IMG/VR virus record: IMGVR_UViG_3300028558_000791
Location: 1 to 64,000 of that record
Length of the DNA: 64,000 bases
Strand: one strand, 5' to 3'
The translations under genes were made by a program, and so were the position numbers. Shown here piece after piece: positions 4,544-57,250 of the stretch (position 1 is its first letter; every line of letters starts with the position of its first letter). Under the pieces are notes generated by a model that had not been told where the DNA came from, did not search any database, and was given only the letters and a program-made list of their open reading frames with translations.

Positions 4544-5038
4544 ATGCATTGGTGTATGGATGAGACTCTGGCGGTTTTAGCGATGCTCCCATTCATCGGC
4601 TATTTCTTCCGCAAGTTACACGCATGGTATCATAAGAAGATGGGACATACCTGTCATGAGAAGCATTGTGATGACATTCATGTAGAGCATGAGGAGCATG
4701 AATTTTCCCCTTATCATATGGATGCTTCTTGTCGAGGTAAGATGCAACGAGTATCTGAAGCGGATATGGAATACCTTCGTGGCACTCCGGCCCCTCTACA
4801 TATTACGGTTCCAATTACTATTTGGGATCCTCTTTCCCAAGATGATGTGAGTGAGCGTTATGGGAATGACCTTGTTGTCTTCCTGTATAAAGAGCTGGCT
4901 GATATTGGTATCCTAGATATCTCTGAAGAGGAAGTTCATTGGTATGTGAATGATAAAGCTGAGCTTTGGGTTCAAGTTCGTAATAAGAACTTCTTCCATG
5001 ACAGCGAAACCTGTGAACATGGCTGGAGAATAGCGTGA
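4544..5038 (+). CDS. Hypothetical protein
   Basis: Packed ORF, N-terminal TM, His-rich. Confidence 0.5.
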   Translation: MHWCMDETLAVLAMLPFIGYFFRKLHAWYHKKMGHTCHEKHCDDIHVEHEEHEFSPYHMDASCRGKMQRVSEADMEYLRGTPAPLHITVPITIWDPLSQDDVSERYGNDLVVFLYKELADIGILDISEEEVHWYVNDKAELWVQVRNKNFFHDSETCEHGWRIA

Positions 5039-5140
5039 ATACTTATTCAAAGGCAGACCTAATGGTCGCGCTTGAAAGAATTGAAAAAGAATATCCTGCT
5101 GTATTCAGGCATTTCTTTCTAGCAGAATTGGAGAAGCGTA

Positions 5141-35712: not shown

Positions 35713-35787
35713 GCGCAACTCGACGACATCGGCATGTTTCGTTTCAATTTGTTGGGACTATTTCCCAAATATGGAAGGTGTATTATT

Positions 35788-37419
35788 ATGTCAAACAAGA
35801 ACTTATTCTCAAACAAGAACAAGCTAACGGTATCTGTTTCTAAGAAGGTAACTCTGCCAACCAACACGGTTAATGAGGCAGGTGGAACTGCATATAAGCT
35901 GTCCGACAAGGCTGCTTTGGCGCAGTACGCCATGACTGGTACGTTCAACGGTACATACTATGCATCCGATGCAGATCAACTTAAGAAGGTCCTTGAGTTG
36001 GCAAACAAGGTAGATCCAAAGTTCGTCGCTAAGCTGGCAGTGTACGCACGCCAGAGAGGCTTGATGAAGGATATGCCTGCCGTTCTTGCAGCCGTCATTG
36101 CTGGAAGAGACGCTGACCTATTGGCTACGATTTTCGATAGAGTAATCGACAATCCAAAGATGCTTCGTAACTTCGTTCAGATCATCCGATCTGGCGCAAC
36201 TGGCCGTAAGTCCTTGGGAACTCGCCCAAAGAAGTTGGTACAGAAGTATCTTGAGAACTTGACCGACGAGCAGTTGTTCAAGGCTGATGTTGGTAACGAT
36301 CCGTCGTTGCAGGACATCATCAAGTTGGTTCACCCAAAGCCAACTAACAAGCAGCGTTCTGCGTTGTACGGTTACTTGCTCGACAAGGAGTACAACAAGA
36401 GAGACCTCGTGTCTTTGGCACAACAGTTCGAAGCATTCAAGAAGGATATGAAGGGAGAGATCCCAGATGTTCCGTTCCAGATGTTGACGGCTCTGCCATT
36501 GACTGATACGCACTGGAAGCAGATTGCTGAGAATGCAACCTGGAACCAGATCCGTATGAACCTCAATACGTTTGCTCGTCACAACGTATTGGCTGACAAG
36601 AAGCTGGTCGATGTTTTGGCAGCAAAGCTATCGGACCCAGAGCAGGTCAAGCGTTCCAAGACGTTCCCATATCAGTTGTTCACCACTTACTTGAACGTGG
36701 ACGCCACGATTCCAAGCAAGCTGACGAACGCATTGCAAGATGCGGCTGATTCTTCTTTGGATAACATTCCTGAGTTCCCAGGAAAGGTCTTCGTAATGGT
36801 TGACACTTCTGGTTCTATGGGCTCTGCCGTCACCGGTAAGAGAGTAAATCCAAAGACTGGTAAGGAGGAATCCTTTACGACTAAGGCTCGATGCGTAGAC
36901 GTGGCAGCACTTTTCGCAGCAGCAATCTTGCGCAAGAATCCAGACACTGAGATTGTGCCATTCGACACCTCAGTACATGTTGGTCACCGATTCAATCCAC
37001 GTGATTCGATCATGACCAATGCAAAGACTCTAGCTTCATTCGGTGGTGGTGGTACCAACTGCTCCGCTGCTTTGGAGTATGTCAACAAAAAGGCTGGCAA
37101 GGGCGACCTTGTCATCTACGTGTCTGACAATGAGTCATGGGTTGATACGAAGGCATCTAACTCAGGTGTGTTCGGATACTACCGCCGTAATGGCACTGCC
37201 ACTATGGAAGAGTGGAATAAGTTCGCAGCCCGTAACAAGGGTGCAAAGCTTGTCTGTATCGACATTCAACCAAACTCCTCCACCCAAGCACACGACAGGG
37301 ATGACATCCTGAACGTGGGAGGATTCAGTGACCAGGTGTTCGATGTAATCGCAAGATTCGCCGAGCTTGGAAACAACAAGGATCTCTGGATCAAGACGAT
37401 CGAAGACGTCAAACTCTAA
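35788..37419 (+). CDS. rsr: Ro60 / TROVE domain RNA-binding protein (Rsr) with vWA domain
   Basis: NEAGGTAY, TGTFNGTYY, LVHPKP, RMNLNTFARH, MIDAS VDTSGSM, GGGTNCS, VSDNESW. Confidence 0.93.
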   Translation: MSNKNLFSNKNKLTVSVSKKVTLPTNTVNEAGGTAYKLSDKAALAQYAMTGTFNGTYYASDADQLKKVLELANKVDPKFVAKLAVYARQRGLMKDMPAVLAAVIAGRDADLLATIFDRVIDNPKMLRNFVQIIRSGATGRKSLGTRPKKLVQKYLENLTDEQLFKADVGNDPSLQDIIKLVHPKPTNKQRSALYGYLLDKEYNKRDLVSLAQQFEAFKKDMKGEIPDVPFQMLTALPLTDTHWKQIAENATWNQIRMNLNTFARHNVLADKKLVDVLAAKLSDPEQVKRSKTFPYQLFTTYLNVDATIPSKLTNALQDAADSSLDNIPEFPGKVFVMVDTSGSMGSAVTGKRVNPKTGKEESFTTKARCVDVAALFAAAILRKNPDTEIVPFDTSVHVGHRFNPRDSIMTNAKTLASFGGGGTNCSAALEYVNKKAGKGDLVIYVSDNESWVDTKASNSGVFGYYRRNGTATMEEWNKFAARNKGAKLVCIDIQPNSSTQAHDRDDILNVGGFSDQVFDVIARFAELGNNKDLWIKTIEDVKL

Positions 37420-37494: not shown

Positions 37495-37911
37495 ATGAAT
37501 AAGTTAGAAGATTTAGTGGCGGCAGCAAGACTAGCCGCCCAACATTCGTACAGTCCATACAGCAACTTCAAAGTTGCATCCGCCGTAGAAATGGAAGATG
37601 GAAGCATCTTTAGCGGCTCTAATGTAGAGAATGCGTCTTACGGTCTCACTATCTGTGCAGAGCGCAACGCAATCTTTCAAGCTGTGTCTAAGGGACATCG
37701 CCTAATAAAACGTATCATTGTCTACGCTCCTTCACCAACTGTTCGTACTGGCCCTTGTGGAGCCTGTAGGCAGGTAATTAAAGAATTTGCCGATGAATAT
37801 ACACTAATCATTGGCGCCTGTAACTCAGACGATATATTAACTTTTACAATGGAAGATTTGTTACCAAAGAGTTTTGGTCCCGATAATCTTCTAAAGAAAA
37901 GAAACCAATGA
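37495..37911 (+). CDS. cdd: Cytidine deaminase
   Basis: YSPYS, NVENASYGLTICAER, PCGACRQ. Confidence 0.93.
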   Translation: MNKLEDLVAAARLAAQHSYSPYSNFKVASAVEMEDGSIFSGSNVENASYGLTICAERNAIFQAVSKGHRLIKRIIVYAPSPTVRTGPCGACRQVIKEFADEYTLIIGACNSDDILTFTMEDLLPKSFGPDNLLKKRNQ

Positions 37912-38753
37912 TTAAGCGAAATGGCGTAGAGGTAATGAACGCCCGCACTAAAAACGTCTCTATTGCCAAAGAAACAATCGCTATAATCAACAACCAAAAA
38001 TACACCAATCTCAATGGAGATACAGTAGATATCTCAGTAGAAATGGATGCGGCCATAGACGGCACTCATTACTATGAGGCTGACGTTTTAGTCGGCATGC
38101 CCGCCGATCAGGCTCCCATTCACGCTACGATTGAGGTAGTAAATGAGACTACTGCTCAAGCTGCTGTTCGATTGCAAGCTAAAGGAAAAACTAATCTAGT
38201 TGCCCTTAACTTCGCTTCAGCGCGTAATCAAGGTGGAGGCTTTCTTTCTGGAGCTTTGGCTCAAGAAGAAGACTTGTGTAGGGCTTCTGGCCTATATGGT
38301 TGCCTGAAACGCAAACCATTGTTCTACAATGCAAACATCCTGTGTGACGATGCATTCTATACAAATGGAGTTCTCTACTCACCTAACGTTCCGTTCTTTA
38401 GGGATGATCATAATCTGTTTTTAGAGAAGCCTTTTCCGCTTTCTATCGTCTCAGCACCAGCTCCTAACCTTTCTAGCACCAAGTCGAACATCGACCCTAA
38501 AGTATTAACCTCTCTTATTAGAGAGCGTACTGTTAGGATTCTACAGGTGGCTCATGCCAATGGGCATAAGAACATCATTTTAGGTGCCTGGGGCTGTGGA
38601 GCCTTCGGAAATGATCCTGAAATGGTATCAAAAGCATTTATGTTGGCCCTAACTAAAGTTCCATATTTCGAGCATGTAACCTTTGCGGTATATGATACCA
38701 GAGAGCCGTACGTTTTATATGAAACGTTCAAAGAAGTCTGTAACGCTGTATAG
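37908..38753 (+). CDS. TIGR02452/DUF2263 bacterial-type poly(ADP-ribose) glycohydrolase
   Basis: LNFASA..GGGF..GALAQEEDLCRAS, LGAWGCGAFGN. Confidence 0.9.
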   Translation: MIKRNGVEVMNARTKNVSIAKETIAIINNQKYTNLNGDTVDISVEMDAAIDGTHYYEADVLVGMPADQAPIHATIEVVNETTAQAAVRLQAKGKTNLVALNFASARNQGGGFLSGALAQEEDLCRASGLYGCLKRKPLFYNANILCDDAFYTNGVLYSPNVPFFRDDHNLFLEKPFPLSIVSAPAPNLSSTKSNIDPKVLTSLIRERTVRILQVAHANGHKNIILGAWGCGAFGNDPEMVSKAFMLALTKVPYFEHVTFAVYDTREPYVLYETFKEVCNAV

Positions 38754-39315
38754 ACCAACCGGCCCAAAAGAGTTAGATTTGATTAAAAAGTCTAACTATA
38801 AGAAGTTCCCGCCCCGCTTGCCTGAACAACCAATTTTCTATCCAGTTCTTACAAAAGAGTATGCGGTAAAGATTGCACGAGATTGGAATGTAAAAGCTTC
38901 CGGAATAGGTTTTGTACTAGAATTCAAGGTCCGAAAGGATTTTCTAGACAAATATCCAGTGCAAGTAGCTGGCGGCAATTCTCATCAGGAGTATTGGATT
39001 CCAGCGGAAGAATTAGAAGACTTCAATCAAGCTCTAGTGGGCGAGATAAAGGTCACTGAGACGTACCAAGAGTGGTACATTTACATCCTAAAGTGTTCTG
39101 ATGGTACTTTGTACACAGGTATCACGAACAATCTGGGTAAACGAATCAAACAACATAACGAGGGTAAAGGCGCAAAGTACACGAAGGGTCGTGGTCCCGT
39201 TGCCCTTGTTAAGTTTTTCACCCGATTAACTAAGGGTGAAGCCCTGAAACTTGAATATCAGATCAAACAACTCTCTAAAGAAGAGAAACTGAATTACAAT
39301 GAGCAGAAGAGGTAA
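38719..39315 (+). CDS. Conserved LYRP..RLPEQPIFYPV domain fused to GIY-YIG nuclease
   Basis: C-terminal YIYILKCSDGTLYTGITNN..R..HN..GAKYT. Confidence 0.75.
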   Translation: MKRSKKSVTLYRPTGPKELDLIKKSNYKKFPPRLPEQPIFYPVLTKEYAVKIARDWNVKASGIGFVLEFKVRKDFLDKYPVQVAGGNSHQEYWIPAEELEDFNQALVGEIKVTETYQEWYIYILKCSDGTLYTGITNNLGKRIKQHNEGKGAKYTKGRGPVALVKFFTRLTKGEALKLEYQIKQLSKEEKLNYNEQKR

Positions 39316-39871
39316 AAAAAGTTTTAGTCCTCAATTTGAAAGAGACTACACTTTTTATCTGTCTAATAAAGATAACTTCACATTTGCTGGTTCAGATCTA
39401 AAATTACAATATCGTATTCAGTTTCCAGGAGAACCGGAACCAATTGGTAAGGATGAAGGGGGAAAGGACATTAATGTTCCATTCTCTATTCCTTACTCAG
39501 CAACTGGTAAAACTGCCAAGGTATGTTTCTATTCGCTAGATAGCGAAGGTAAATGTAAACCTTGTGCAGAACCGCAACTTCTAGTAGAAATTCTCACTTG
39601 TAAGGCCGCAATCAATCTACAGATTAAGATTTGGTCACAGAGTCGAGCCGAGTATACTTTATCCAAGATTGAGTTACAAGAATATCTTGATCACTATCAA
39701 GCTCCTGAATGGGTTTTCAAAGCGATTGAGAATCAAAAACTTAAGATTTTGAAGGAATGGAGCGCCGAAAAGCTTTATAAATCCGACTATTACAAGCGGG
39801 CTTATGAGCTTCATATGGGCGAATTTTTAGAAGAGATGCGTGGTTCCGGTGTTATATTAGATCCGAAATGA
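39299..39871 (+). CDS. Hypothetical protein
   Basis: Packed ORF. Confidence 0.55.
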   Translation: MSRRGKKSFSPQFERDYTFYLSNKDNFTFAGSDLKLQYRIQFPGEPEPIGKDEGGKDINVPFSIPYSATGKTAKVCFYSLDSEGKCKPCAEPQLLVEILTCKAAINLQIKIWSQSRAEYTLSKIELQEYLDHYQAPEWVFKAIENQKLKILKEWSAEKLYKSDYYKRAYELHMGEFLEEMRGSGVILDPK

Positions 39872-39893
39872 TCAAACACTGATTAGGAACATA

Positions 39894-40595
39894 ATGACCA
39901 AGGAAAACTTTACATCTATCAACGTAATCATCGACGCATCTGGCTCGATGTCTCACCTCACCCATGACACCATCGGGAACTTTAATACCTTCTTGCAAGA
40001 GCAAAAGGCATTCCCCGGTGAAGCTGTCTTCACTCTTTGTACTTTCAATACTGATTATCACTTGGTCCATGACTTCGTGAAGATTGCTGGTGTCCCTAGC
40101 TTGGATGCTAAGACCTATGTTCCACAAGGTGGAACCGCTTTGTTAGATGCTATGGGATCAACTATTGATTCTGTTGGTAAGAAGTTGGCCGCATTACCAG
40201 AAGAGGAACGTCCTTCTAAGGTTATTTTCCTCATCATCACTGATGGTCATGAAAACTCCAGTCGTCGTTTTGATGCGGCTCAAGTTAAGTCTATGGTCGA
40301 ACATCAGAAGGATACTTATAGTTGGGAGTTCGTATTCATGGGCGCTAACATTGATGCTATCTCTGCCGGCACCAACCTTGGTATCTCTATGCAGAACACT
40401 CTCAACTACGTTCCAAGTGCCGCTGGTACCGAGAATTTGTACAAGAGTATCAGTTCTAACGTAAGCAGCTATCGTGGCTCCAACTCTTCTAGAGTTGACT
40501 TTTTCAATCAGACTCAACAGGGCGTTGGCTCAGTTACTCCTCCAGTCGTAGTTACAACTACCACTACGGTAACTCCTCCAAAGACCTCAAAGTAA
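39894..40595 (+). CDS. von Willebrand factor A domain protein
   Basis: IIDASGSM, GGTALLDA, ITDGHENSS. Confidence 0.88.
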   Translation: MTKENFTSINVIIDASGSMSHLTHDTIGNFNTFLQEQKAFPGEAVFTLCTFNTDYHLVHDFVKIAGVPSLDAKTYVPQGGTALLDAMGSTIDSVGKKLAALPEEERPSKVIFLIITDGHENSSRRFDAAQVKSMVEHQKDTYSWEFVFMGANIDAISAGTNLGISMQNTLNYVPSAAGTENLYKSISSNVSSYRGSNSSRVDFFNQTQQGVGSVTPPVVVTTTTTVTPPKTSK

Positions 40596-40599
40596 TATC

Positions 40600-40806
40600 A
40601 TGTGTGCCGTTTCAGTTATCTATGACATGTTTGGTGGACAACCAGACGATTGGTATACGCTGGAACGTATTGATCTTTTCAAACGTATGGTGGCTGATGC
40701 TCGACTCTTCGATGAGGAGTCGGGCCAGCCCGATTGCGAAGACCCTGAAAAAACTAAAGTTACTGAACGCATTGAAAAAATCGAAGAAGAACTAGAGCAG
40801 AAGTAA
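40600..40806 (+). CDS. Hypothetical phage protein
   Basis: MCAVSVIYD...QPDCEDPEK. Confidence 0.55.
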   Translation: MCAVSVIYDMFGGQPDDWYTLERIDLFKRMVADARLFDEESGQPDCEDPEKTKVTERIEKIEEELEQK

Positions 40807-40807
40807 A

Positions 40808-41416
40808 ATGACTAAAGCATTATATGTTGGTAGTTTCGACCCTATCACCAACGGTCATATTGATATTATGAAGCGTAGCTTACAGTTCTGTAAGCAACTG
40901 GTGATTGGGATAGGTATCAATCCTAACAAGACTACTATGTTTGATGAGCGGGAGAGGAACTCCATGATTTTTCAAACGATAGTGAAGGAGTTTGACTTCC
41001 TTCATTCAACCAATACTTCGGTTGCTTCTTTTCAGGGACTTACAGTAGAGTATGCTAAAGAAATTGGTGCAACGATTCTAATTCGCGGAATTAGATCCGT
41101 TTCTGATTTCGAATATGAAATTAATTTGGCCAACATCAACAAGGTTCTGGCCCCATCAATTGAAACAATTTTCCTGCCCACCAGTCCTGATCTGGCGGTT
41201 GTCTCCTCTTCAATGGTAAAAGAAATTGCAAAGTTGAACGGAGATATTTCAAGATTCGTACCCAGCTATATTGCCGAGAGGATTCATTCAAAATTCGGTT
41301 TCTTCAAGCATGGCAAGACAGAGATTGGCACTGATACTATCAATAGATTACGAGAAGCTACAGTAGCTATTGAGAAAGAATTGGGAATCAAACCAAAAGA
41401 TGAGGGCGAAAAATAA
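40808..41416 (+). CDS. coaD: Phosphopantetheine adenylyltransferase
   Basis: GSFDPITNGH, IRGIRSVSDFEYE, VSSSMVKEIA. Confidence 0.92.
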   Translation: MTKALYVGSFDPITNGHIDIMKRSLQFCKQLVIGIGINPNKTTMFDERERNSMIFQTIVKEFDFLHSTNTSVASFQGLTVEYAKEIGATILIRGIRSVSDFEYEINLANINKVLAPSIETIFLPTSPDLAVVSSSMVKEIAKLNGDISRFVPSYIAERIHSKFGFFKHGKTEIGTDTINRLREATVAIEKELGIKPKDEGEK

Positions 41417-41430
41417 AAATTAGCGACGGG

Positions 41431-41458
41431 TTGACGAGCTAATTTTTAAGACTACAAT
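41431..41458 (+). promoter_or_regulatory. sigma70-like promoter of the RNA cluster
   Basis: TTGACG-N16-TACAAT. Confidence 0.55.
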
Positions 41459-42245: not shown

Positions 42246-42353
42246 TGACGAATGTCCGAGTAGGATTACATTTTTATGCAAAAAAACCGATGGGGTTCGA
42301 TTCCCCTTTAGGGCTGGCGCCAGGCAAAACATCTTATTCATTTCTTGTCGTCA
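42246..42353 (+). ncRNA. Y RNA-like 1 (T-arm cargo)
   Basis: TGACGA-ATG..GAGTAGGAT-TACA / ATCTTATTC..TTG-TCGTCA; internal GGGG-TTCGATT-CCCC. Confidence 0.8.
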
Positions 42354-42623: not shown

Positions 42624-42724
42624 TGGGATACATTAAGTTGGTAATCATTACGATTCTGGTTCGAGTGGTAGGAACACAAATCGGAAACGTAAGTGAGAAG
42701 GTTCGAATCCTTCTGTCCTGACCA
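42624..42724 (+). ncRNA. tRNA-like RNA with long replaced anticodon arm
   Basis: TGGGATA/TGTCCTG plus ACCA; GAAGG-TTCGAAT-CCTTC; arm TTAC-GATT..AATC..GTAA. Confidence 0.7.
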
Positions 42725-42727
42725 AAT

Positions 42728-42801
42728 GACTTTGTGGACAAATTATTAAGTCACTCCCGTTAGAGGGAGAGATGTAAGTGCAAGGCTTGCCAAGGTCACC
42801 A
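42728..42801 (+). ncRNA. tRNA-like RNA with 6-nt anticodon loop (GTTAGA)
   Basis: GACTTTG/CAAGGTC plus ACCA; CTCCC/GGGAG; T-loop TGCAAGG. Confidence 0.7.
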
Positions 42802-42802
42802 T

Positions 42803-43019
42803 GTAACAAATGCCCCGAGAGGATTACATTCATTAGGAGAACGAGGTCGTGGGTCCGAGTCCCACCACTGCTACCATCCCAAAGCACGTCATTAAATTGA
42901 AGGGACACTCGAAAGAGTGATGTTGCCTGACTTACTTAGCGAAAGCTATCTAAGTCCTCATAGCAGTGTAGCTCAGTTGGCAGAGCGCGAAAAACATCTT
43001 TTCAAATTTTTGTTGTTAC
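42803..43019 (+). ncRNA. Y RNA-like 3 containing a circularly permuted tRNA with internal CCA
   Basis: GTAACAA-ATG..GAGAGGAT-TACA / ATCTTTTC..TTG-TTGTTAC; T arm plus CACTGCT-A-CCA precedes AGCAGTG plus D arm. Confidence 0.85.
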
Positions 43020-43022
43020 TAT

Positions 43023-43056
43023 CTCCGCTGTAGGGTCAAACCTAAAGCGGGGACCA
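43023..43056 (+). ncRNA. Minihelix: 12-position hairpin plus A-CCA
   Basis: CTCCGCTGTAGG-GTCAAA-CCTAAAGCGGGG-A-CCA. Confidence 0.6.
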
Positions 43057-43982: not shown

Positions 43983-44411
43983 ATGTTTACTTCAACCGGA
44001 ATCCTTCAATATGATCCTGGTCAGGGTCTAAAACATTTCGATCCATGGTGGGCTCTTCTAGCCTGTGACGATGAAGTATCTAGGTATTATGCCTGGTTAC
44101 TAAAGAGACACGGAGTAGAAGTCTACCCTAACGATAAAGGGTTGTGGGGAACACACGTTTCAGTTTTGAAAGGTGCCGTCCCTCCCAATCAAGATAAGTG
44201 GGGCAAGTATCAAGACTTCGAAGTAGAAATCCATCTCAATCATCTTGTCCGTTATGATAACGGGAAACATGCTTGGGTAGATGTATACTCAGAAGATTTA
44301 TCAGCAATCCGACAGGAGTTAGGCTTCGATGCCAAGCCCTGGTACCATCTGACAATTGGTAGGTTGGTGAGACCATTTGATGTGGACTTTACCAAATATG
44401 GCATAACCTGA
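43983..44411 (+). CDS. 2H phosphoesterase family protein
   Basis: Two HxS/T motifs (THVSV, YHLTI) about 65 aa apart. Confidence 0.7.
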   Translation: MFTSTGILQYDPGQGLKHFDPWWALLACDDEVSRYYAWLLKRHGVEVYPNDKGLWGTHVSVLKGAVPPNQDKWGKYQDFEVEIHLNHLVRYDNGKHAWVDVYSEDLSAIRQELGFDAKPWYHLTIGRLVRPFDVDFTKYGIT

Positions 44412-44502: not shown

Positions 44503-44569
44503 AAGTCAAATGCCTTGATAGGATTACATTTTACCAAAAGAAAACATCTTATCTACTTTTTGTTGACTT
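44503..44569 (+). ncRNA. Y RNA-like 5 (minimal, stem only)
   Basis: AAGTCAA-ATG..GATAGGAT-TACA / AAAC-ATCTTATC..TTG-TTGACTT. Confidence 0.8.
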
Positions 44570-44669: not shown

Positions 44670-44746
44670 GGCACTGTAGCCCAAAGGCAGGAGGCACCTG
44701 ACTTAAAATCAGTTCAGTGTGGGTTCAAATCCCACCAGTGCTACCA
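44670..44746 (+). tRNA. tRNA-Leu(TAA) with short variable loop
   Basis: CTGA-CTTAAAA-TCAG; no type II arm. Confidence 0.85.
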
Positions 44747-45270: not shown

Positions 45271-45481
45271 GTAACGAATGCAGTTAGGATTACATCCATA
45301 ACGACCTTAAAGTAGTTGACAGAGCCGCGAGGCGCTGAATCGATGGCAACAAAACGATCACCAGGTAATGCTGAGGTCCATCAGACTCTTGAGTCGAAGT
45401 TGCGGGGCGAACGGGAAGTATCTCGAAAGAGACTTTCAATGTGCCGGTCACACCCAGTATCTTAGCAATTTTTGTCGTTAT
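45271..45481 (+). ncRNA. Y RNA-like 6 (large unknown cargo)
   Basis: GTAACGA-ATG..GTTAGGAT-TACA / ATCTTAGC..TTG-TCGTTAT. Confidence 0.78.
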
Positions 45482-50072: not shown

Positions 50073-50149
50073 GGGTCTTTTGATGTAAAGGCTGGCCTCT
50101 AGACTTTAGTGCTAGAGGACATCGGGTTCGACTCCCGAATGATCCGCCA
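50073..50149 (+). ncRNA. tRNA-like RNA, no D stem, loop CT-TTA-GT
   Basis: GGGTC/GATCC plus GCCA; CCTCTAG/CTAGAGG; TCGGG-TTCGACT-CCCGA. Confidence 0.65.
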
Positions 50150-56566: not shown

Positions 56567-56898
56567 ACATGAGCTTAGCTTGGTCAAAGGATATGGAATT
56601 GGATCCTGGTACGTTTGGAGGTTCTCCGGCATGCCATGTTTTAGTAGATATGATGAATCACAATGTTATTCCTATTATAGAGAAGCATCGTGTTTTATCA
56701 TTCATCAATGATGCTATCTATCAATTCAAGTGGTTATCCACTGTGAAGGAGTATGGCGTCAAGGAGAGGTCTATGGTTCTGATGAGGGACGATATTCTAT
56801 CTAGGGTGGATCATATGCCATATCCTGCCAAGTTTAATTCACATCTGAAGAACGTGATAACTCACCACTTCAGACGATACTTGAAAGAAGAGACCTAG
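56563..56898 (+). CDS. Hypothetical protein
   Basis: Packed ORF. Confidence 0.5.
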   Translation: MNMSLAWSKDMELDPGTFGGSPACHVLVDMMNHNVIPIIEKHRVLSFINDAIYQFKWLSTVKEYGVKERSMVLMRDDILSRVDHMPYPAKFNSHLKNVITHHFRRYLKEET

Positions 56899-57250
56899 AC
56901 AATCGCTCCCGTAAGGAGAGGAAAGTCGGAGCTACGTAGGGCAATTTGCTGGCTAACGGCCAGGCGCAGTGATGCGACAGATAGTGCAACAGAAAAGAAA
57001 CCGCCATGAATCCGCCAGGCCCGAAAGGGAGCAACGGTAGATGGTAAGGGTGAAATGGTGGGGTAAGAGCCCACCGCACCTATAGTGATATAGGTGGCAA
57101 GGTAAACCTCAGATGTAGCAAGCTAAATAGAGAGTGACTTGTCCGGTCAATACTCTCGGGTTAGTGCTGGAGCCATTAGGTAACTAACGGCCAAGATTAA
57201 TGATTGTCTCGATTTATAGACAGGACTCCGCTTATAGGGTGTCTTCTTTC
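56883..57250 (+). ncRNA. rnpB: RNase P RNA, bacterial type A
   Basis: GAGGAAAGTCGGAG, AGTGCAACAGAAA, GGGTGAAA..GGTAAGAG, GGTAAACC, ACAGGACTCCGCTTA; P1 GAAAGAAGA/TCTTCTTTC. Confidence 0.93.

What the first reader, a model, noticed from the sequence alone, without database searches (positions are those of the whole stretch)
42803..43019. Y RNA carrying a circularly permuted tRNA with an encoded CCA (predicted two-piece, possibly chargeable RNA)
Seen: inside the Ro stem the 3' half of a tRNA comes first (AGGTC, GTGGG-TCCGAGT-CCCAC, CACTGCT-A-CCA at 42866-42876). An 85-nt spacer with GAAA-capped hairpins follows, then the 5' half (AGCAGTG-TA-GCTC-AGTTGGCA-GAGC from 42962). The acceptor strands pair 7/7 and the Ro stem sits where the anticodon arm would be. 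Known: in YrlA the acceptor stem is normally closed by a loop, while permuted tmRNA and tRNA genes mature by excising such a spacer. Inference: RNase P plus 3' trimming would give a two-piece Y RNA with a free CCA end, so possibly an aminoacylated Ro RNP or a decoy for tRNA-targeting toxins, and would release the spacer RNA.
Basis: partly seen in the sequence, partly recalled or inferred. Interest (0 to 1): 0.9.

Follow-up and report, generated by a model that had tools for sequence, protein, structure and literature searches.

The report
Phage Y RNA with tRNA-style CCA end
A giant soil phage encodes, downstream of its Ro60 gene, a YrlA-type Y RNA whose tRNA-like arm carries the marks of a real tRNA end (7-bp acceptor stem, A73, encoded CCA, tRNA-type leader) around a replaceable spacer, so it is probably cut into two base-paired pieces, although no cut has been observed.

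Summary
Window 42803-43019 folds as outer stems, T arm, acceptor 3' strand plus A-CCA, an 85-nt spacer, acceptor 5' strand and D arm.

It is a YrlA-class Y RNA. It lies 5.4 kb downstream of a Ro60 ortholog (35734-37419), on the same strand, inside the tRNA island of a 481-kb phage. Its short-spacer twin L058 differs in the core only by one compensatory pair. L058 matches Rfam YrlA (RF02553) over the whole model (42.5 bits, E 1e-8).

I found 24 distinct relatives:
- All seven acceptor pairs covary.
- ACCA follows the acceptor strand in 20 of 24.
- A(-2)U(-1) precedes the 5' strand in 24 of 24. This is also the commonest leader of the phage's own tRNA genes.
- Spacer length runs from 3 to 99 nt.

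YrlAs beside Ro in three other phages I examined have closed acceptor loops and no CCA.

Cleavage by RNase P followed by 3' trimming is therefore the best reading. It has a precedent in Mycobacterium smegmatis YrlA (Chen 2014). It remains an inference, because no RNA ends were seen.

Charging is unsupported. There is no anticodon arm, no G3:U70, and none of the three synthetase families searched is in the phage.

Verdict: a new variant of a known kind.

The parts
35734..37419 (+). Ro60 (Rsr) ortholog, 561 aa, the presumed protein partner
   Evidence: Pfam TROVE (E 3e-9) and vWA_Ro60 (E 9e-14). Matches D. radiodurans Rsr 2NVO at E 9e-9. Relatives carry it 3.5-6 kb upstream of their Y RNAs on the same strand.
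42728..42801 (+). Upstream tRNA-like element ending in ACCA. Its 3' maturation would set the Y RNA 5' end, one U (42802) before G42803.
   Evidence: ARAGORN calls it 'tRNA-???'. Relatives show the same ...CCA-U-GUAACAA junction.
42803..43019 (+). The whole Y RNA precursor (217 nt)
   Evidence: Fold, covariation on 17 homologues, and the Rfam YrlA match of its twin L058.
42803..42824 (+). 5' strands of outer stem P1 (42803-42809) and stem P2 (42817-42824). The invariant GUAACAAAUGCC...GGAUUACAU is the presumed Ro-binding side.
   Evidence: Positions 1-12 and 19-27 are invariant in 17 homologues. The segment aligns to the 'CgaAUGC' part of the Rfam YrlA consensus. Pair 16:200 of P2 covaries.
42844..42865 (+). 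Variable-loop-like AGGUC (42844-42848) and T arm GUGGG-UCCGAGU-CCCAC (42849-42865)
   Evidence: The T stem is 100% paired and 4 of 5 pairs covary. The T loop is UCCGA (C at position 55), which none of the phage's own tRNAs has.
42866..42876 (+). Acceptor 3' strand CACUGCU (42866-42872), discriminator A (42873) and encoded CCA (42874-42876). This is the predicted 3' end of the 74-nt 5' piece.
   Evidence: All 7 acceptor pairs covary. ACCA is present in 20 of 24 relatives, behind 11 different acceptor strands.
42877..42961 (+). 85-nt structured spacer ending in A(-2)U(-1). Predicted to be removed.
   Evidence: Three hairpins, two capped by GAAA. Homologous spacers occur in L063 and L012. It is replaced by 13 unrelated nt in the twin L058. 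It is unique in the genome and contains no promoter-like or terminator-like site.
42962..42986 (+). Acceptor 5' strand AGCAGUG (42962-42968), UA, and D arm GCUC-AGUUGGCA-GAGC (42971-42986). 42962 is the predicted RNase P +1 position.
   Evidence: The D stem is 100% paired and 3 of 4 pairs covary. AU at -2/-1 is present in 24 of 24 relatives and is the commonest leader of the phage's tRNA genes, 31 of 58.
42987..43019 (+). 3' strands of the 2-bp remnant of the anticodon stem (CG 42988-42989), of P2 (42996-43003) and of P1 (43013-43019)
43023..43056 (+). Downstream 34-nt minihelix (7-bp stem, small hairpin, ACCA). RNase P cleavage at its 5' end would set the Y RNA 3' end.
   Evidence: Read from the sequence. 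L058 and L006 keep it with compensatory changes.
56887..57250 (+). Phage-encoded RNase P RNA, bacterial type A, a candidate processing ribozyme
   Evidence: Rfam RF00010, 272.5 bits, full length. The GGGU at the position of the L15 CCA-binding motif is kept (that these bases bind CCA is from my own knowledge of E. coli M1 RNA G292/G293/U294).

Best explanation
This is a YrlA-class Y RNA of a roughly 481-kb phage.

It is transcribed as part of the + strand tRNA island. Its ends are set by maturation of the tRNA-like elements on either side. Its conserved outer stems (GUAACAAAUGCC...GGAUUACAU paired with ...AUCUU...UUGUUGUUAC) presumably bind the phage's Ro60 protein. The other end is a tRNA-like elbow module.

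Unlike ordinary YrlAs, the acceptor stem is not closed by a loop. It is built like a real tRNA end: exactly 7 bp, A73, an encoded CCA, then a spacer that ends in the phage's usual pre-tRNA leader AU.

The proposed mechanism (inferred, not shown) has three steps:
1. RNase P, either the host enzyme or one using the phage RNA at 56887-57250, cuts between U42961 and A42962.
2. The spacer is left as a 3' trailer and is trimmed back to CCA42876.
3. A 74-nt piece and a 58-nt piece stay together through 24 base pairs plus the D/T-loop contacts.

The product would be a Ro-bound Y RNA that displays a free, exonuclease-resistant, tRNA-type CCA end to whatever tRNA-binding factor the module recruits.

The module most simply arose from the junction of a tandemly duplicated tRNA gene (3' half-CCA-spacer-5' half) captured between Y RNA stems.

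My confidence in the YrlA identity is about 0.9. In the two-piece processing it is about 0.6. In any specific downstream role it is low.
For: Identity:
- A Ro60 ortholog lies 5.4 kb upstream on the same strand. The same arrangement holds in L004, L005, L008, L021 and L025.
- The twin L058 matches the window RNA in 73 of 74 and 57 of 58 positions of the two pieces. It matches Rfam YrlA RF02553 over model positions 1-114 at 42.5 bits, E 1.3e-8. That is better than the 36.1 bits of the YrlA of mycobacteriophage Rizal.
- The order T arm, acceptor stem, UA, D arm is also found beside Ro in the phages Rizal, csAssE-Sib and Olaya.

Structure:
- 97.1% of cells are paired and 15 pairs change on both sides. 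All 7 acceptor pairs do so.

Processing signals:
- ACCA in 20 of 24 relatives, behind 11 different acceptor strands. AU at -2/-1 in 24 of 24. All 14 members with a spacer of 12 nt or more keep ACCA.
- Of the phage's own 58 tRNA and tmRNA genes, 56 encode CCA. U(-1) occurs in 39 and AU in 31.
- The spacer runs from 3 to 99 nt and is swapped (85 against 13 unrelated nt) between RNAs whose cores differ only by the compensatory 1:72 pair.
- There is no promoter-like or terminator-like site inside, so a single precursor is likely.
- The two pieces cofold at -35.9 kcal/mol, against -18.7 for the pieces folded apart.
- The phage has an RNase P RNA and two ORFs of the CCA-adding/poly(A) polymerase family (PolyA_pol).

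Precedent: M. smegmatis YrlA, which has a 7-bp acceptor stem, is cut by RNase P in vivo and in vitro. Both halves co-precipitate with Rsr, and the 5' half ends in CCA (PMC4201824; 10.1101/312249).
Against: - No RNA ends were seen. No public RNA run holds this phage.
- RNA-library contigs of short-spacer relatives run across the CCA-spacer-+1 junction (X14 185 nt, X25 2139 nt). At least some molecules there, precursor RNA or contaminating DNA, are uncut.
- Four relatives with 3-4-nt spacers have lost CCA (ACUG, ACAA, ACUA) and look like ordinary closed loops.
- A73 can pair with U(-1), which would also explain why those two bases are conserved in a closed hairpin.
- The long spacers are themselves conserved, structured domains. 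That is unexpected for a throw-away trailer and would fit an appended module in an uncut RNA.
- The whole-RNA fold z-score is only -1.6.
- The window RNA itself does not reach any Rfam threshold.
- The Ro gene is 5.4 kb away, beyond the 4 kb within which Chen et al. found most YrlAs.
Confidence: 0.6

Rival explanations
1. It is a one-piece YrlA. The RNA is never opened. The 85-nt insert is an extra structured module grafted onto the tip of the acceptor hairpin, as Y RNAs carry varied effector modules. ACCA and AU are a relic of the tRNA-gene junction from which the module arose, or form the closing A-U pair plus a loop motif.
For: - Most known YrlAs are closed, as are those of Rizal, csAssE-Sib and Olaya.
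- The long spacers fold into conserved multi-hairpin domains, and a few pairs in them are kept through changes on both sides.
- RNA-library contigs of relatives span the junction.
- Other Y-like RNAs of this phage carry large internal modules, for example 45271-45481.
Against: - A relic would not survive as ACCA behind 11 different, compensated acceptor strands and as AU in 24 of 24.
- A loop motif with a function is hard to reconcile with spacers of 3 to 99 nt, or with an 85-nt against 13-nt swap between otherwise identical RNAs.
- The co-resident closed paralogs use a GGCA tetraloop and carry no CCA. So the phages have a closed design available and keep this one distinct from it.
Confidence: 0.27
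2. It is a charged two-piece RNA. After opening, the CCA end is aminoacylated, so the Ro RNP carries an amino acid or enters translation-related pathways, as tmRNA or viral tRNA-like structures do.
For: - It has a free-CCA design, A73, a 7-bp acceptor stem and a tRNA-like elbow.
- Chen et al. raised the same possibility for M. smegmatis YrlA.
Against: - There is no anticodon arm. Only 2 bp remain where it would be.
- Pair 3:70 is C-G, not the G:U needed by AlaRS. There is no long variable arm for SerRS and no G-1:C73 for HisRS. These identity rules are from established knowledge.
- The T loop has C55 instead of U55.
- The three synthetase Pfam families searched (tRNA-synt_1, tRNA-synt_2c and tRNA-synt_2b) have no match in the phage genome.
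- The phage has a separate standard tmRNA.
Confidence: 0.05
3. It is a genuine permuted tRNA or permuted tmRNA gene that matures into a translating RNA.
For: - The topology (3' half, CCA, spacer, 5' half) is that of permuted tRNA genes and two-piece tmRNA genes.
- There are weak Rfam hits to tmRNA (9.4 bits) and tmRNA_permuted (10.5 bits, E 3.1).
Against: - Those hits are not significant.
- No anticodon stem-loop can form.
- Only 58 nt follow the 5' acceptor strand, which leaves no room for a tag reading frame or pseudoknots.
- ARAGORN finds no permuted tmRNA here and finds a standard tmRNA elsewhere in the genome.
- The genome has no RtcB ligase.
- Instead, the outer stems carry the YrlA consensus.
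Confidence: 0.02
4. It is a chance or annotation artefact: the T arm of one decayed tRNA gene happens to lie next to the D arm of the next. This is the 'dimeric tRNA' false positive that Chen et al. warn about.
For: - The locus lies in a dense tRNA array.
- A dimeric-tRNA false positive of the YrlA model does occur in phage Mx1.
Against: - The two acceptor strands pair with each other 7/7 and covary in 17 homologues.
- No 5' half lies upstream and no 3' half lies downstream.
- Shuffled genomes give 0-1 such modules.
Confidence: 0.01

Closest known systems
YrlA Y RNAs (Rfam RF02553; S. Typhimurium YrlA, Chen et al. 2014; crystal structure Wang et al. 2018)
   Same: - It is encoded on the same strand as a Ro60 ortholog.
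- Long terminal stems carry the 5' ...CRAAUGC... motif.
- The internal module has the order variable region, T arm, acceptor-like stem, UA, D arm. This is a circularly permuted tRNA in which the Ro stem takes the place of the anticodon arm.
- The twin L058 aligns to the whole Rfam model.
   Different: - Typical YrlAs have a 5-6-bp (or much longer) acceptor stem closed by a small loop, and 'lack a free CCA end'.
- This RNA has exactly 7 bp, A73, an encoded CCA, a 3-99-nt spacer and an AU leader.
- Its T loop is UCCGA rather than UUCGA.
- It is 5.4 kb from Ro and embedded in a tRNA array.
- Its Rfam score is below the gathering threshold.
Mycobacterium smegmatis YrlA (Chen et al. 2014, PMC4201824)
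   Same: - It has a 7-bp acceptor stem.
- It is opened by RNase P in vivo and in vitro.
- Its two halves (82 and 65 nt) stay bound to Rsr, and the 5' half ends in CCA. This is the product predicted here.
   Different: - There the CCA is completed after the cut (CA is added) and the loop is short.
- Here the full ACCA is genomically encoded and conserved across a clade, and up to 99 nt of structured RNA must be removed.
- Cleavage has not been shown here.
Two-piece (permuted) tmRNA genes of alpha-proteobacteria, cyanobacteria and others
   Same: - The gene order is T arm, acceptor 3' strand-CCA, intervening segment, acceptor 5' strand.
- The intervening segment is excised and the two pieces stay base-paired.
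   Different: - It has no tag reading frame, no pseudoknots and no G3:U70.
- The Rfam permuted-tmRNA models do not match significantly.
- The outer stems are Y RNA stems.
Permuted tRNA genes (Cyanidioschyzon merolae, some archaea)
   Same: The 3' half precedes the 5' half. The acceptor end is opened by RNase P and 3' processing.
   Different: - Those mature through a circular intermediate, made by the splicing endonuclease and ligase, into normal tRNAs with an anticodon.
- Here no anticodon arm can form and no RtcB is encoded.
mascRNA/MALAT1-type tRNA-like elements
   Same: A tRNA-like fold inside a longer non-coding RNA is used as an RNase P cleavage signal.
   Different: - Those are eukaryotic.
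- Cleavage there releases a small tRNA-like RNA from the 3' end of a long RNA. It does not open a Ro-bound scaffold.

Membership tests
YrlA (Y RNA-like A; Rfam RF02553) | Encoded close to a Ro60/TROVE gene and on the same strand (Chen 2014: nearly all within 4 kb) | tested here: met
   The Ro60 ortholog is at 35734-37419 on the + strand and the RNA is at 42803-43019 on the + strand. The gap is 5.4 kb, slightly over 4 kb. Relatives show gaps of 3.5-6 kb on the same strand.
YrlA (Y RNA-like A; Rfam RF02553) | Conserved T-arm-like and D-arm-like stem-loops with an acceptor-like stem between them | tested here: met
   All three helices are 99-100% paired, with changes on both sides in 14 of 16 pairs. 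The same order is found in the Ro-adjacent RNAs of Rizal, csAssE-Sib and Olaya.
YrlA (Y RNA-like A; Rfam RF02553) | 5' motif GNCGAAN0-1G, the presumed Ro contact | tested here: inconclusive
   This RNA has AACAAAUG, a 6 of 8 match. Paralogs at 42247 and at genome position 76354 have the exact GACGAAUG. The segment aligns to 'CgaAUGC' of the Rfam consensus.
YrlA (Y RNA-like A; Rfam RF02553) | Covariance-model score at or above the Rfam gathering threshold (69 bits) | tested here: not met
   The window RNA gives only a 13.3-bit partial hit because of the 85-nt insert. The twin L058 scores 42.5 bits, E 1.3e-8, over the full model. The YrlA of mycobacteriophage Rizal also falls short, at 36.1 bits. 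The threshold therefore excludes the phage members tested.
YrlA (Y RNA-like A; Rfam RF02553) | Bound by the Ro60 ortholog | not testable with these tools
   This needs co-immunoprecipitation or a gel-shift assay with the protein encoded at 35734-37419.
RNase P-opened YrlA (M. smegmatis type) | Seven-base-pair acceptor stem stacked on a 5-bp T stem | tested here: met
   7/7 pairs here. The length is fixed at 7 in the 17 aligned homologues.
RNase P-opened YrlA (M. smegmatis type) | Cleavage by RNase P at +1 and a CCA 3' end on the 5' half | not testable with these tools
   Only the signals are seen: encoded ACCA, an AU leader like that of the phage's tRNA genes, and a phage RNase P RNA. RNA-library contigs are uninformative.
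Permuted (two-piece) tmRNA | Tag reading frame and pseudoknots after the 5' acceptor strand, and G3:U70 | tested here: not met
   Only 58 nt follow the 5' acceptor strand, and pair 3:70 is C-G. RF04321 scores 10.5 bits, E 3.1. ARAGORN finds no tmRNA here.
Permuted tRNA gene | An anticodon stem-loop forms once the transcript ends are joined | tested here: not met
   Only a 2-bp CG/CG remnant lies where the anticodon stem would be. ARAGORN and the Rfam tRNA model call no tRNA. The genome has no RtcB.

The most novel reading that the evidence does not exclude
Giant phages keep a dedicated class of Ro60-bound Y RNAs that RNase P opens into two pieces with a genuine tRNA 3' end. That end would be functional in one of two ways:
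- it is charged or tagged;
- it serves as bait or sensor for host factors that act on tRNA acceptor ends, such as nucleotidyltransferase or nuclease toxins, CCA-adding quality control, or RNase P itself.

In this reading the conserved, structured 85-99-nt spacers are released as separate small RNAs. That would make RNase P punctuation a way to produce several non-coding RNAs from one Y RNA gene.
Probability: 0.12. Interest if true: 0.85.

Novelty: new variant of a known kind. Interest (0 to 1): 0.6.

Why it matters
What the tRNA-like module of bacterial Y RNAs does is an open question. The single report of an RNase P-opened, CCA-ended YrlA (M. smegmatis) has been treated as an exception.

This finding is a clade of at least 24 distinct phage Y RNAs in which the open tRNA end is written into the gene: A73, CCA and a pre-tRNA leader. 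It is kept through compensatory evolution and through repeated spacer gain and loss. It sits next to closed-loop paralogs in the same genomes. If the cut occurs, that would show that a free acceptor end on a Ro RNP is a selected design and not an accident.

It also supplies natural matched pairs for experiments:
- the window RNA (85-nt spacer) and L058 (13-nt spacer), otherwise identical apart from the compensatory 1:72 pair;
- L025, a relative with the same outer stems and nearly the same acceptor stem but no CCA.

It shows that Y RNAs can be embedded in tRNA arrays and released by tRNA processing. One phage can carry five or more Y-like RNAs that share a Ro stem and differ in their modules.

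Tried and rejected
- **Rfam on the window**. No family reaches threshold at the locus. The 85-nt insert hides the YrlA match, which only showed through the short-spacer twin L058.
- **Full-length covariance model from alignment A1.** I used regular-expression and pairing scans in Python instead.
- **Exact search for the T arm-acceptor-CCA string in viral contigs.** No match.
- **Pattern GGTCCGANTCC(N10)ACCA in viral contigs**. It gave no new family members, and it shows that C55 is not unique to Y RNAs.
- **Expression data.** No RNA run holds this phage. Laying RNA-library contigs of relatives gave junction-spanning contigs and one 151-nt contig that ends 1 nt after the CCA. Neither is decisive, because contigs are not reads and DNA may be present.
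- **Myxococcus phage Mx1** (Ro 52% identical; it is a sequenced, named phage and so a possible experimental system). No Y RNA of this family and no convincing YrlA within 9 kb of its Ro gene.
- **Spacer as a repeat or mobile element.** It is unique in the genome and in all loci fetched.
- **Spacer as a known ribozyme or other Rfam family.** Nothing found.
- **Two separate transcripts.** No promoter-like or terminator-like site lies inside the RNA.
- **Donor tRNA.** No phage tRNA is clearly the source of the module. The best partial resemblance is the 3' half of tRNA-Leu(UAA) at 44670.
- **Phage-encoded synthetase or RtcB as partners.** None found for the families searched.
- **Supplementary alignments of Chen 2014 and the 2020 Annual Review.** Not held.
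Full report
**Where the window comes from.** The window is the first 64 kb of a 480,838-bp IMG/VR virus record. An identical copy lies on a 498,445-bp metagenome contig (L033), and the runs that hold the sequence are rhizosphere metagenomes. The genome has 57 tRNA genes and a tmRNA and a type A RNase P RNA at 56887-57250 (272.5 bits). The only DNA match among cultured phages is a tRNA of Bacillus phage G. By its Ro protein, the nearest sequenced phage is Myxococcus phage Mx1, at 52% identity.

**Checking the observation.**
- AGGTC: 42844-42848.
- T arm: 42849-42865.
- CACTGCT-A-CCA: 42866-42876.
- Spacer: 85 nt, 42877-42961, with two GAAA-capped hairpins.
- AGCAGTG-TA-GCTC-AGTTGGCA-GAGC: from 42962.
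- Outer stem: GTAACAA (42803-42809) paired with TTGTTAC (43013-43019).

RNAfold returns exactly this architecture, although the z-score for the whole molecule is only -1.6. A strict scan for a permuted module finds this site as the only hit on the + strand of the genome. The scan requires a 5-bp T stem with a T-loop consensus, a 7/7 acceptor, then 2 nt, then a 4-bp D stem whose loop contains GG. It finds one weak hit on the - strand and 0-1 hits in shuffled genomes.

**Context.** ORF 35734-37419 (+) has TROVE and vWA_Ro60 domains and matches D. radiodurans Rsr (2NVO, E 9e-9). Between it and the tRNA island lie genes resembling a cytidine deaminase, a PARG, a GIY-YIG nuclease and a cytidylyltransferase. 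A promoter-like site at 41431-41458 precedes the island. No promoter-like or terminator-like site lies inside the RNA.

The RNA starts one nucleotide after the CCA of an odd tRNA-like element (42728-42801). Three nucleotides after its end comes a 34-nt minihelix that itself ends in ACCA (43023-43056). Both ends of the RNA would therefore be set by tRNA-type processing of its neighbours.

**Homologues.** The Ro protein recovered three viral loci. BLAST showed the RNA downstream of Ro in L004 and L005. The invariant 5' segment then served as a pattern, GTAACRAATGCY-N5-6-GGNTTACA. It recovered 8 viral and 57 metagenome stretches. About two thirds of the 65 distinct sequences are members of the family.

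Wherever the contig reaches far enough, a Ro gene lies 3.5-6 kb upstream on the same strand.

Two paralogous designs occur, often on the same contig (L026, L041, L046, L063):
- A 'closed' type has a UUCGA T loop and a 7-bp acceptor hairpin capped by GGCA.
- An 'open' type, to which the window RNA belongs, has a UCCGA T loop.

**Structure support.**
- 97.1% of cells form a standard pair, against 35-60% when partners are slid and 84.5% when shuffled.
- 15 pairs change on both sides.
- The acceptor helix covaries at all 7 pairs and is 99.2% paired.
- The T stem covaries at 4 of 5 pairs and the D stem at 3 of 4.

**The acceptor end.** There are 24 distinct open-type members.
- ACCA follows the 7-nt acceptor 3' strand directly in 20, behind 11 different acceptor sequences.
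- A73 and C74 are present in all 24.
- The two nucleotides before the 5' strand are AU in 24 of 24.
- The distance from A76 to +1 is 3-4 nt in 10 members, 12-13 nt in 7, 34 nt in 1, and 85-99 nt in 6.
- All 14 members with 12 nt or more keep ACCA. The four without CCA all have 3-4-nt spacers.

The clearest natural experiment is L058. Its 74-nt 5' part and 58-nt 3' part differ from the window RNA at one position each. Those two positions form the 1:72 pair, U-A there instead of A-U here. Its spacer is 13 unrelated nucleotides instead of 85.

The phage's true tRNA genes look the same at their ends. Of 58, 56 encode CCA. U is at -1 in 39 and AU at -2/-1 in 31. The internal site of the Y RNA therefore looks like a 5' processing site of the phage's own pre-tRNAs.

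**Family assignment.** Rfam has a YrlA model (RF02553, gathering score 69).
- It hits the YrlA of mycobacteriophage Rizal, upstream of its Ro gene, at 36.1 bits.
- It hits L058 over the full model at 42.5 bits (E 1.3e-8 in a small search, 4.6e-7 in 6.4 kb). That alignment covers the outer stems, the 'CgaAUGC' motif, the T arm, the acceptor stem and the D arm.
- The window RNA itself is missed because of its insert.

The YrlA-like modules beside Ro in Rizal, csAssE-Sib and Xanthomonas phage Olaya all have closed acceptor loops without CCA. [quoted passage not shown]

The exception is M. smegmatis YrlA. It has a 7-bp stem, is cut by RNase P in vivo and in vitro, ends in CCA after CA addition, and both halves stay with Rsr (PMC4201824). 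The two-piece idea is therefore not new. What is new here is that the complete tRNA end is encoded, is conserved in a phage clade, and is separated from the 5' strand by a freely varying and sometimes large structured spacer.

**Mechanism.**

*Shown:* the fold and its covariation, the conserved end signals, the dispensability of the spacer, the Ro gene, the RNase P RNA, and two ORFs of the CCA-adding/poly(A) polymerase family in the genome.

*Inferred:* RNase P cuts at 42961/42962. The spacer, now a 3' trailer, is removed down to the CCA. The two pieces stay together (cofold -35.9 kcal/mol against -18.7 apart). The RNase P RNA keeps GGGU at the position of the L15 motif, which in E. coli M1 RNA pairs with the substrate CCA; that last point is from my own knowledge.

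*Origin:* the module most simply arose from the junction of a tandemly duplicated tRNA gene. That would yield complementary acceptor strands, a CCA and a leader in one step.

**What speaks against it.**
- No RNA ends could be observed. No RNA run holds the phage.
- Contigs from RNA libraries that carry short-spacer relatives cross the junction. One 151-nt contig stops 1 nt after the CCA, which is only a hint.
- The long spacers are conserved structured domains. Type 1 (window, L063, L012) has an invariant CACUC-GAAA-GAGUG hairpin and a terminal hairpin with four compensatory pairs. Type 2 (L026, L036, L046) is closed by an 8-bp stem. They may be released RNAs, or appended modules of an uncut RNA.

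**Charging.**
- There is no anticodon arm.
- Pair 3:70 is C-G.
- There is no long variable arm.
- The T loop has C55.
- The phage has no match to the three synthetase Pfam families searched (tRNA-synt_1, tRNA-synt_2c, tRNA-synt_2b).
- It has a separate tmRNA.

I put charging at about 5%. Nothing tested bears on the decoy idea.

**Verdict.** It is a YrlA-class Y RNA, and a new variant of that known kind. Two-piece maturation is likely (about 0.6) but unproven. Charging and the decoy role are speculative.

Noticed in passing
window 42246-42353, 44503-44569, 45271-45481; genome 76352-76473 (outside the window): At least four more Y-like RNAs share the same outer stem, bulge and second stem (..RAAUGYC..GGAUUACAU.. 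paired with ..AUCUU..UUGUYGUYR). Their internal modules differ: a T arm plus a small hairpin, a minimal hairpin, a 150-nt multi-branch module, and a hairpin plus T arm plus GUAA hairpin. Each is wedged between tRNA genes. One phage therefore carries five or more Y RNAs punctuated by tRNAs.
   Followed up: partly
window 43023-43056: A 34-nt minihelix, CUCCGCU-GU-AGG-GUCAAA-CCU-AA-AGCGGGG-ACCA, lies 3 nt after the Y RNA. It is a 7-bp acceptor-like stem, one small hairpin and an encoded ACCA. L058 and L006 keep it with compensatory stem changes. It looks like a minimal RNase P / CCA-enzyme substrate of unknown role.
   Followed up: partly
window 42728-42801 and 42624-42721: Two odd tRNA-like genes lie just upstream. 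ARAGORN calls the first 'tRNA-???' with a 2-nt anticodon. The second is a weak Rfam tRNA hit (17.2 bits) with a 31-nt insert in the anticodon region. Both end in CCA.
   Followed up: no
window 42854-42860 and homologues: Nearly all open-type Y RNAs have the T loop UCCGA (C at the position of pseudouridine 55). The closed-type paralogs and all 57 tRNAs of this phage have UUCGA or UUCAA. UCCGA T loops do occur in ordinary tRNAs of other phages. The meaning is unknown.
   Followed up: partly
window 56887-57250; window 50073-50149; genome 170047-170403, 172924-172997, 173183-173255: The phage encodes its own RNase P RNA and a tmRNA (tag ANDNAFAMAA). It also has suppressor-type tRNAs, one with anticodon UUA and two with CUA. 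These hint at stop-codon reassignment or read-through during infection.
   Followed up: no
L004 16300-16395, L005 17500-17580, L008 about 4995-5075: In relatives, a tRNA-like gene immediately follows the Y RNA. It has an A/U-rich D region (AGUUUAAAUAUUAAAAC) and an unusual T loop (UGAAAGU or CGCAAAU). ARAGORN does not call it. The L005 copy has a possible UUA anticodon.
   Followed up: no
window 37495-41416: Between Ro60 and the tRNA island lie genes for a cytidine/dCMP deaminase, a microbial-type PARG (poly-ADP-ribose glycohydrolase), a GIY-YIG nuclease and a cytidylyltransferase-like (NMNAT-type) protein. A weak 2H phosphoesterase match lies at 43983-44411. This could be an RNA or NAD repair and counter-defence neighbourhood.
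   Followed up: no
genome 258639-259010 (-) and 229261-229659 (+), outside the window: Two ORFs carry the PolyA_pol (CCA-adding enzyme / poly(A) polymerase) head domain, at 129 and 51 bits. The phage may maintain CCA ends itself.
   Followed up: no
window 42798-42876 (run X24): A 151-nt contig from a metatranscriptome library carries a close relative. It covers the upstream tRNA-like element plus the 5' piece and stops 1 nt after the CCA. Its length equals one read, so the end may simply be a read end.
   Followed up: no
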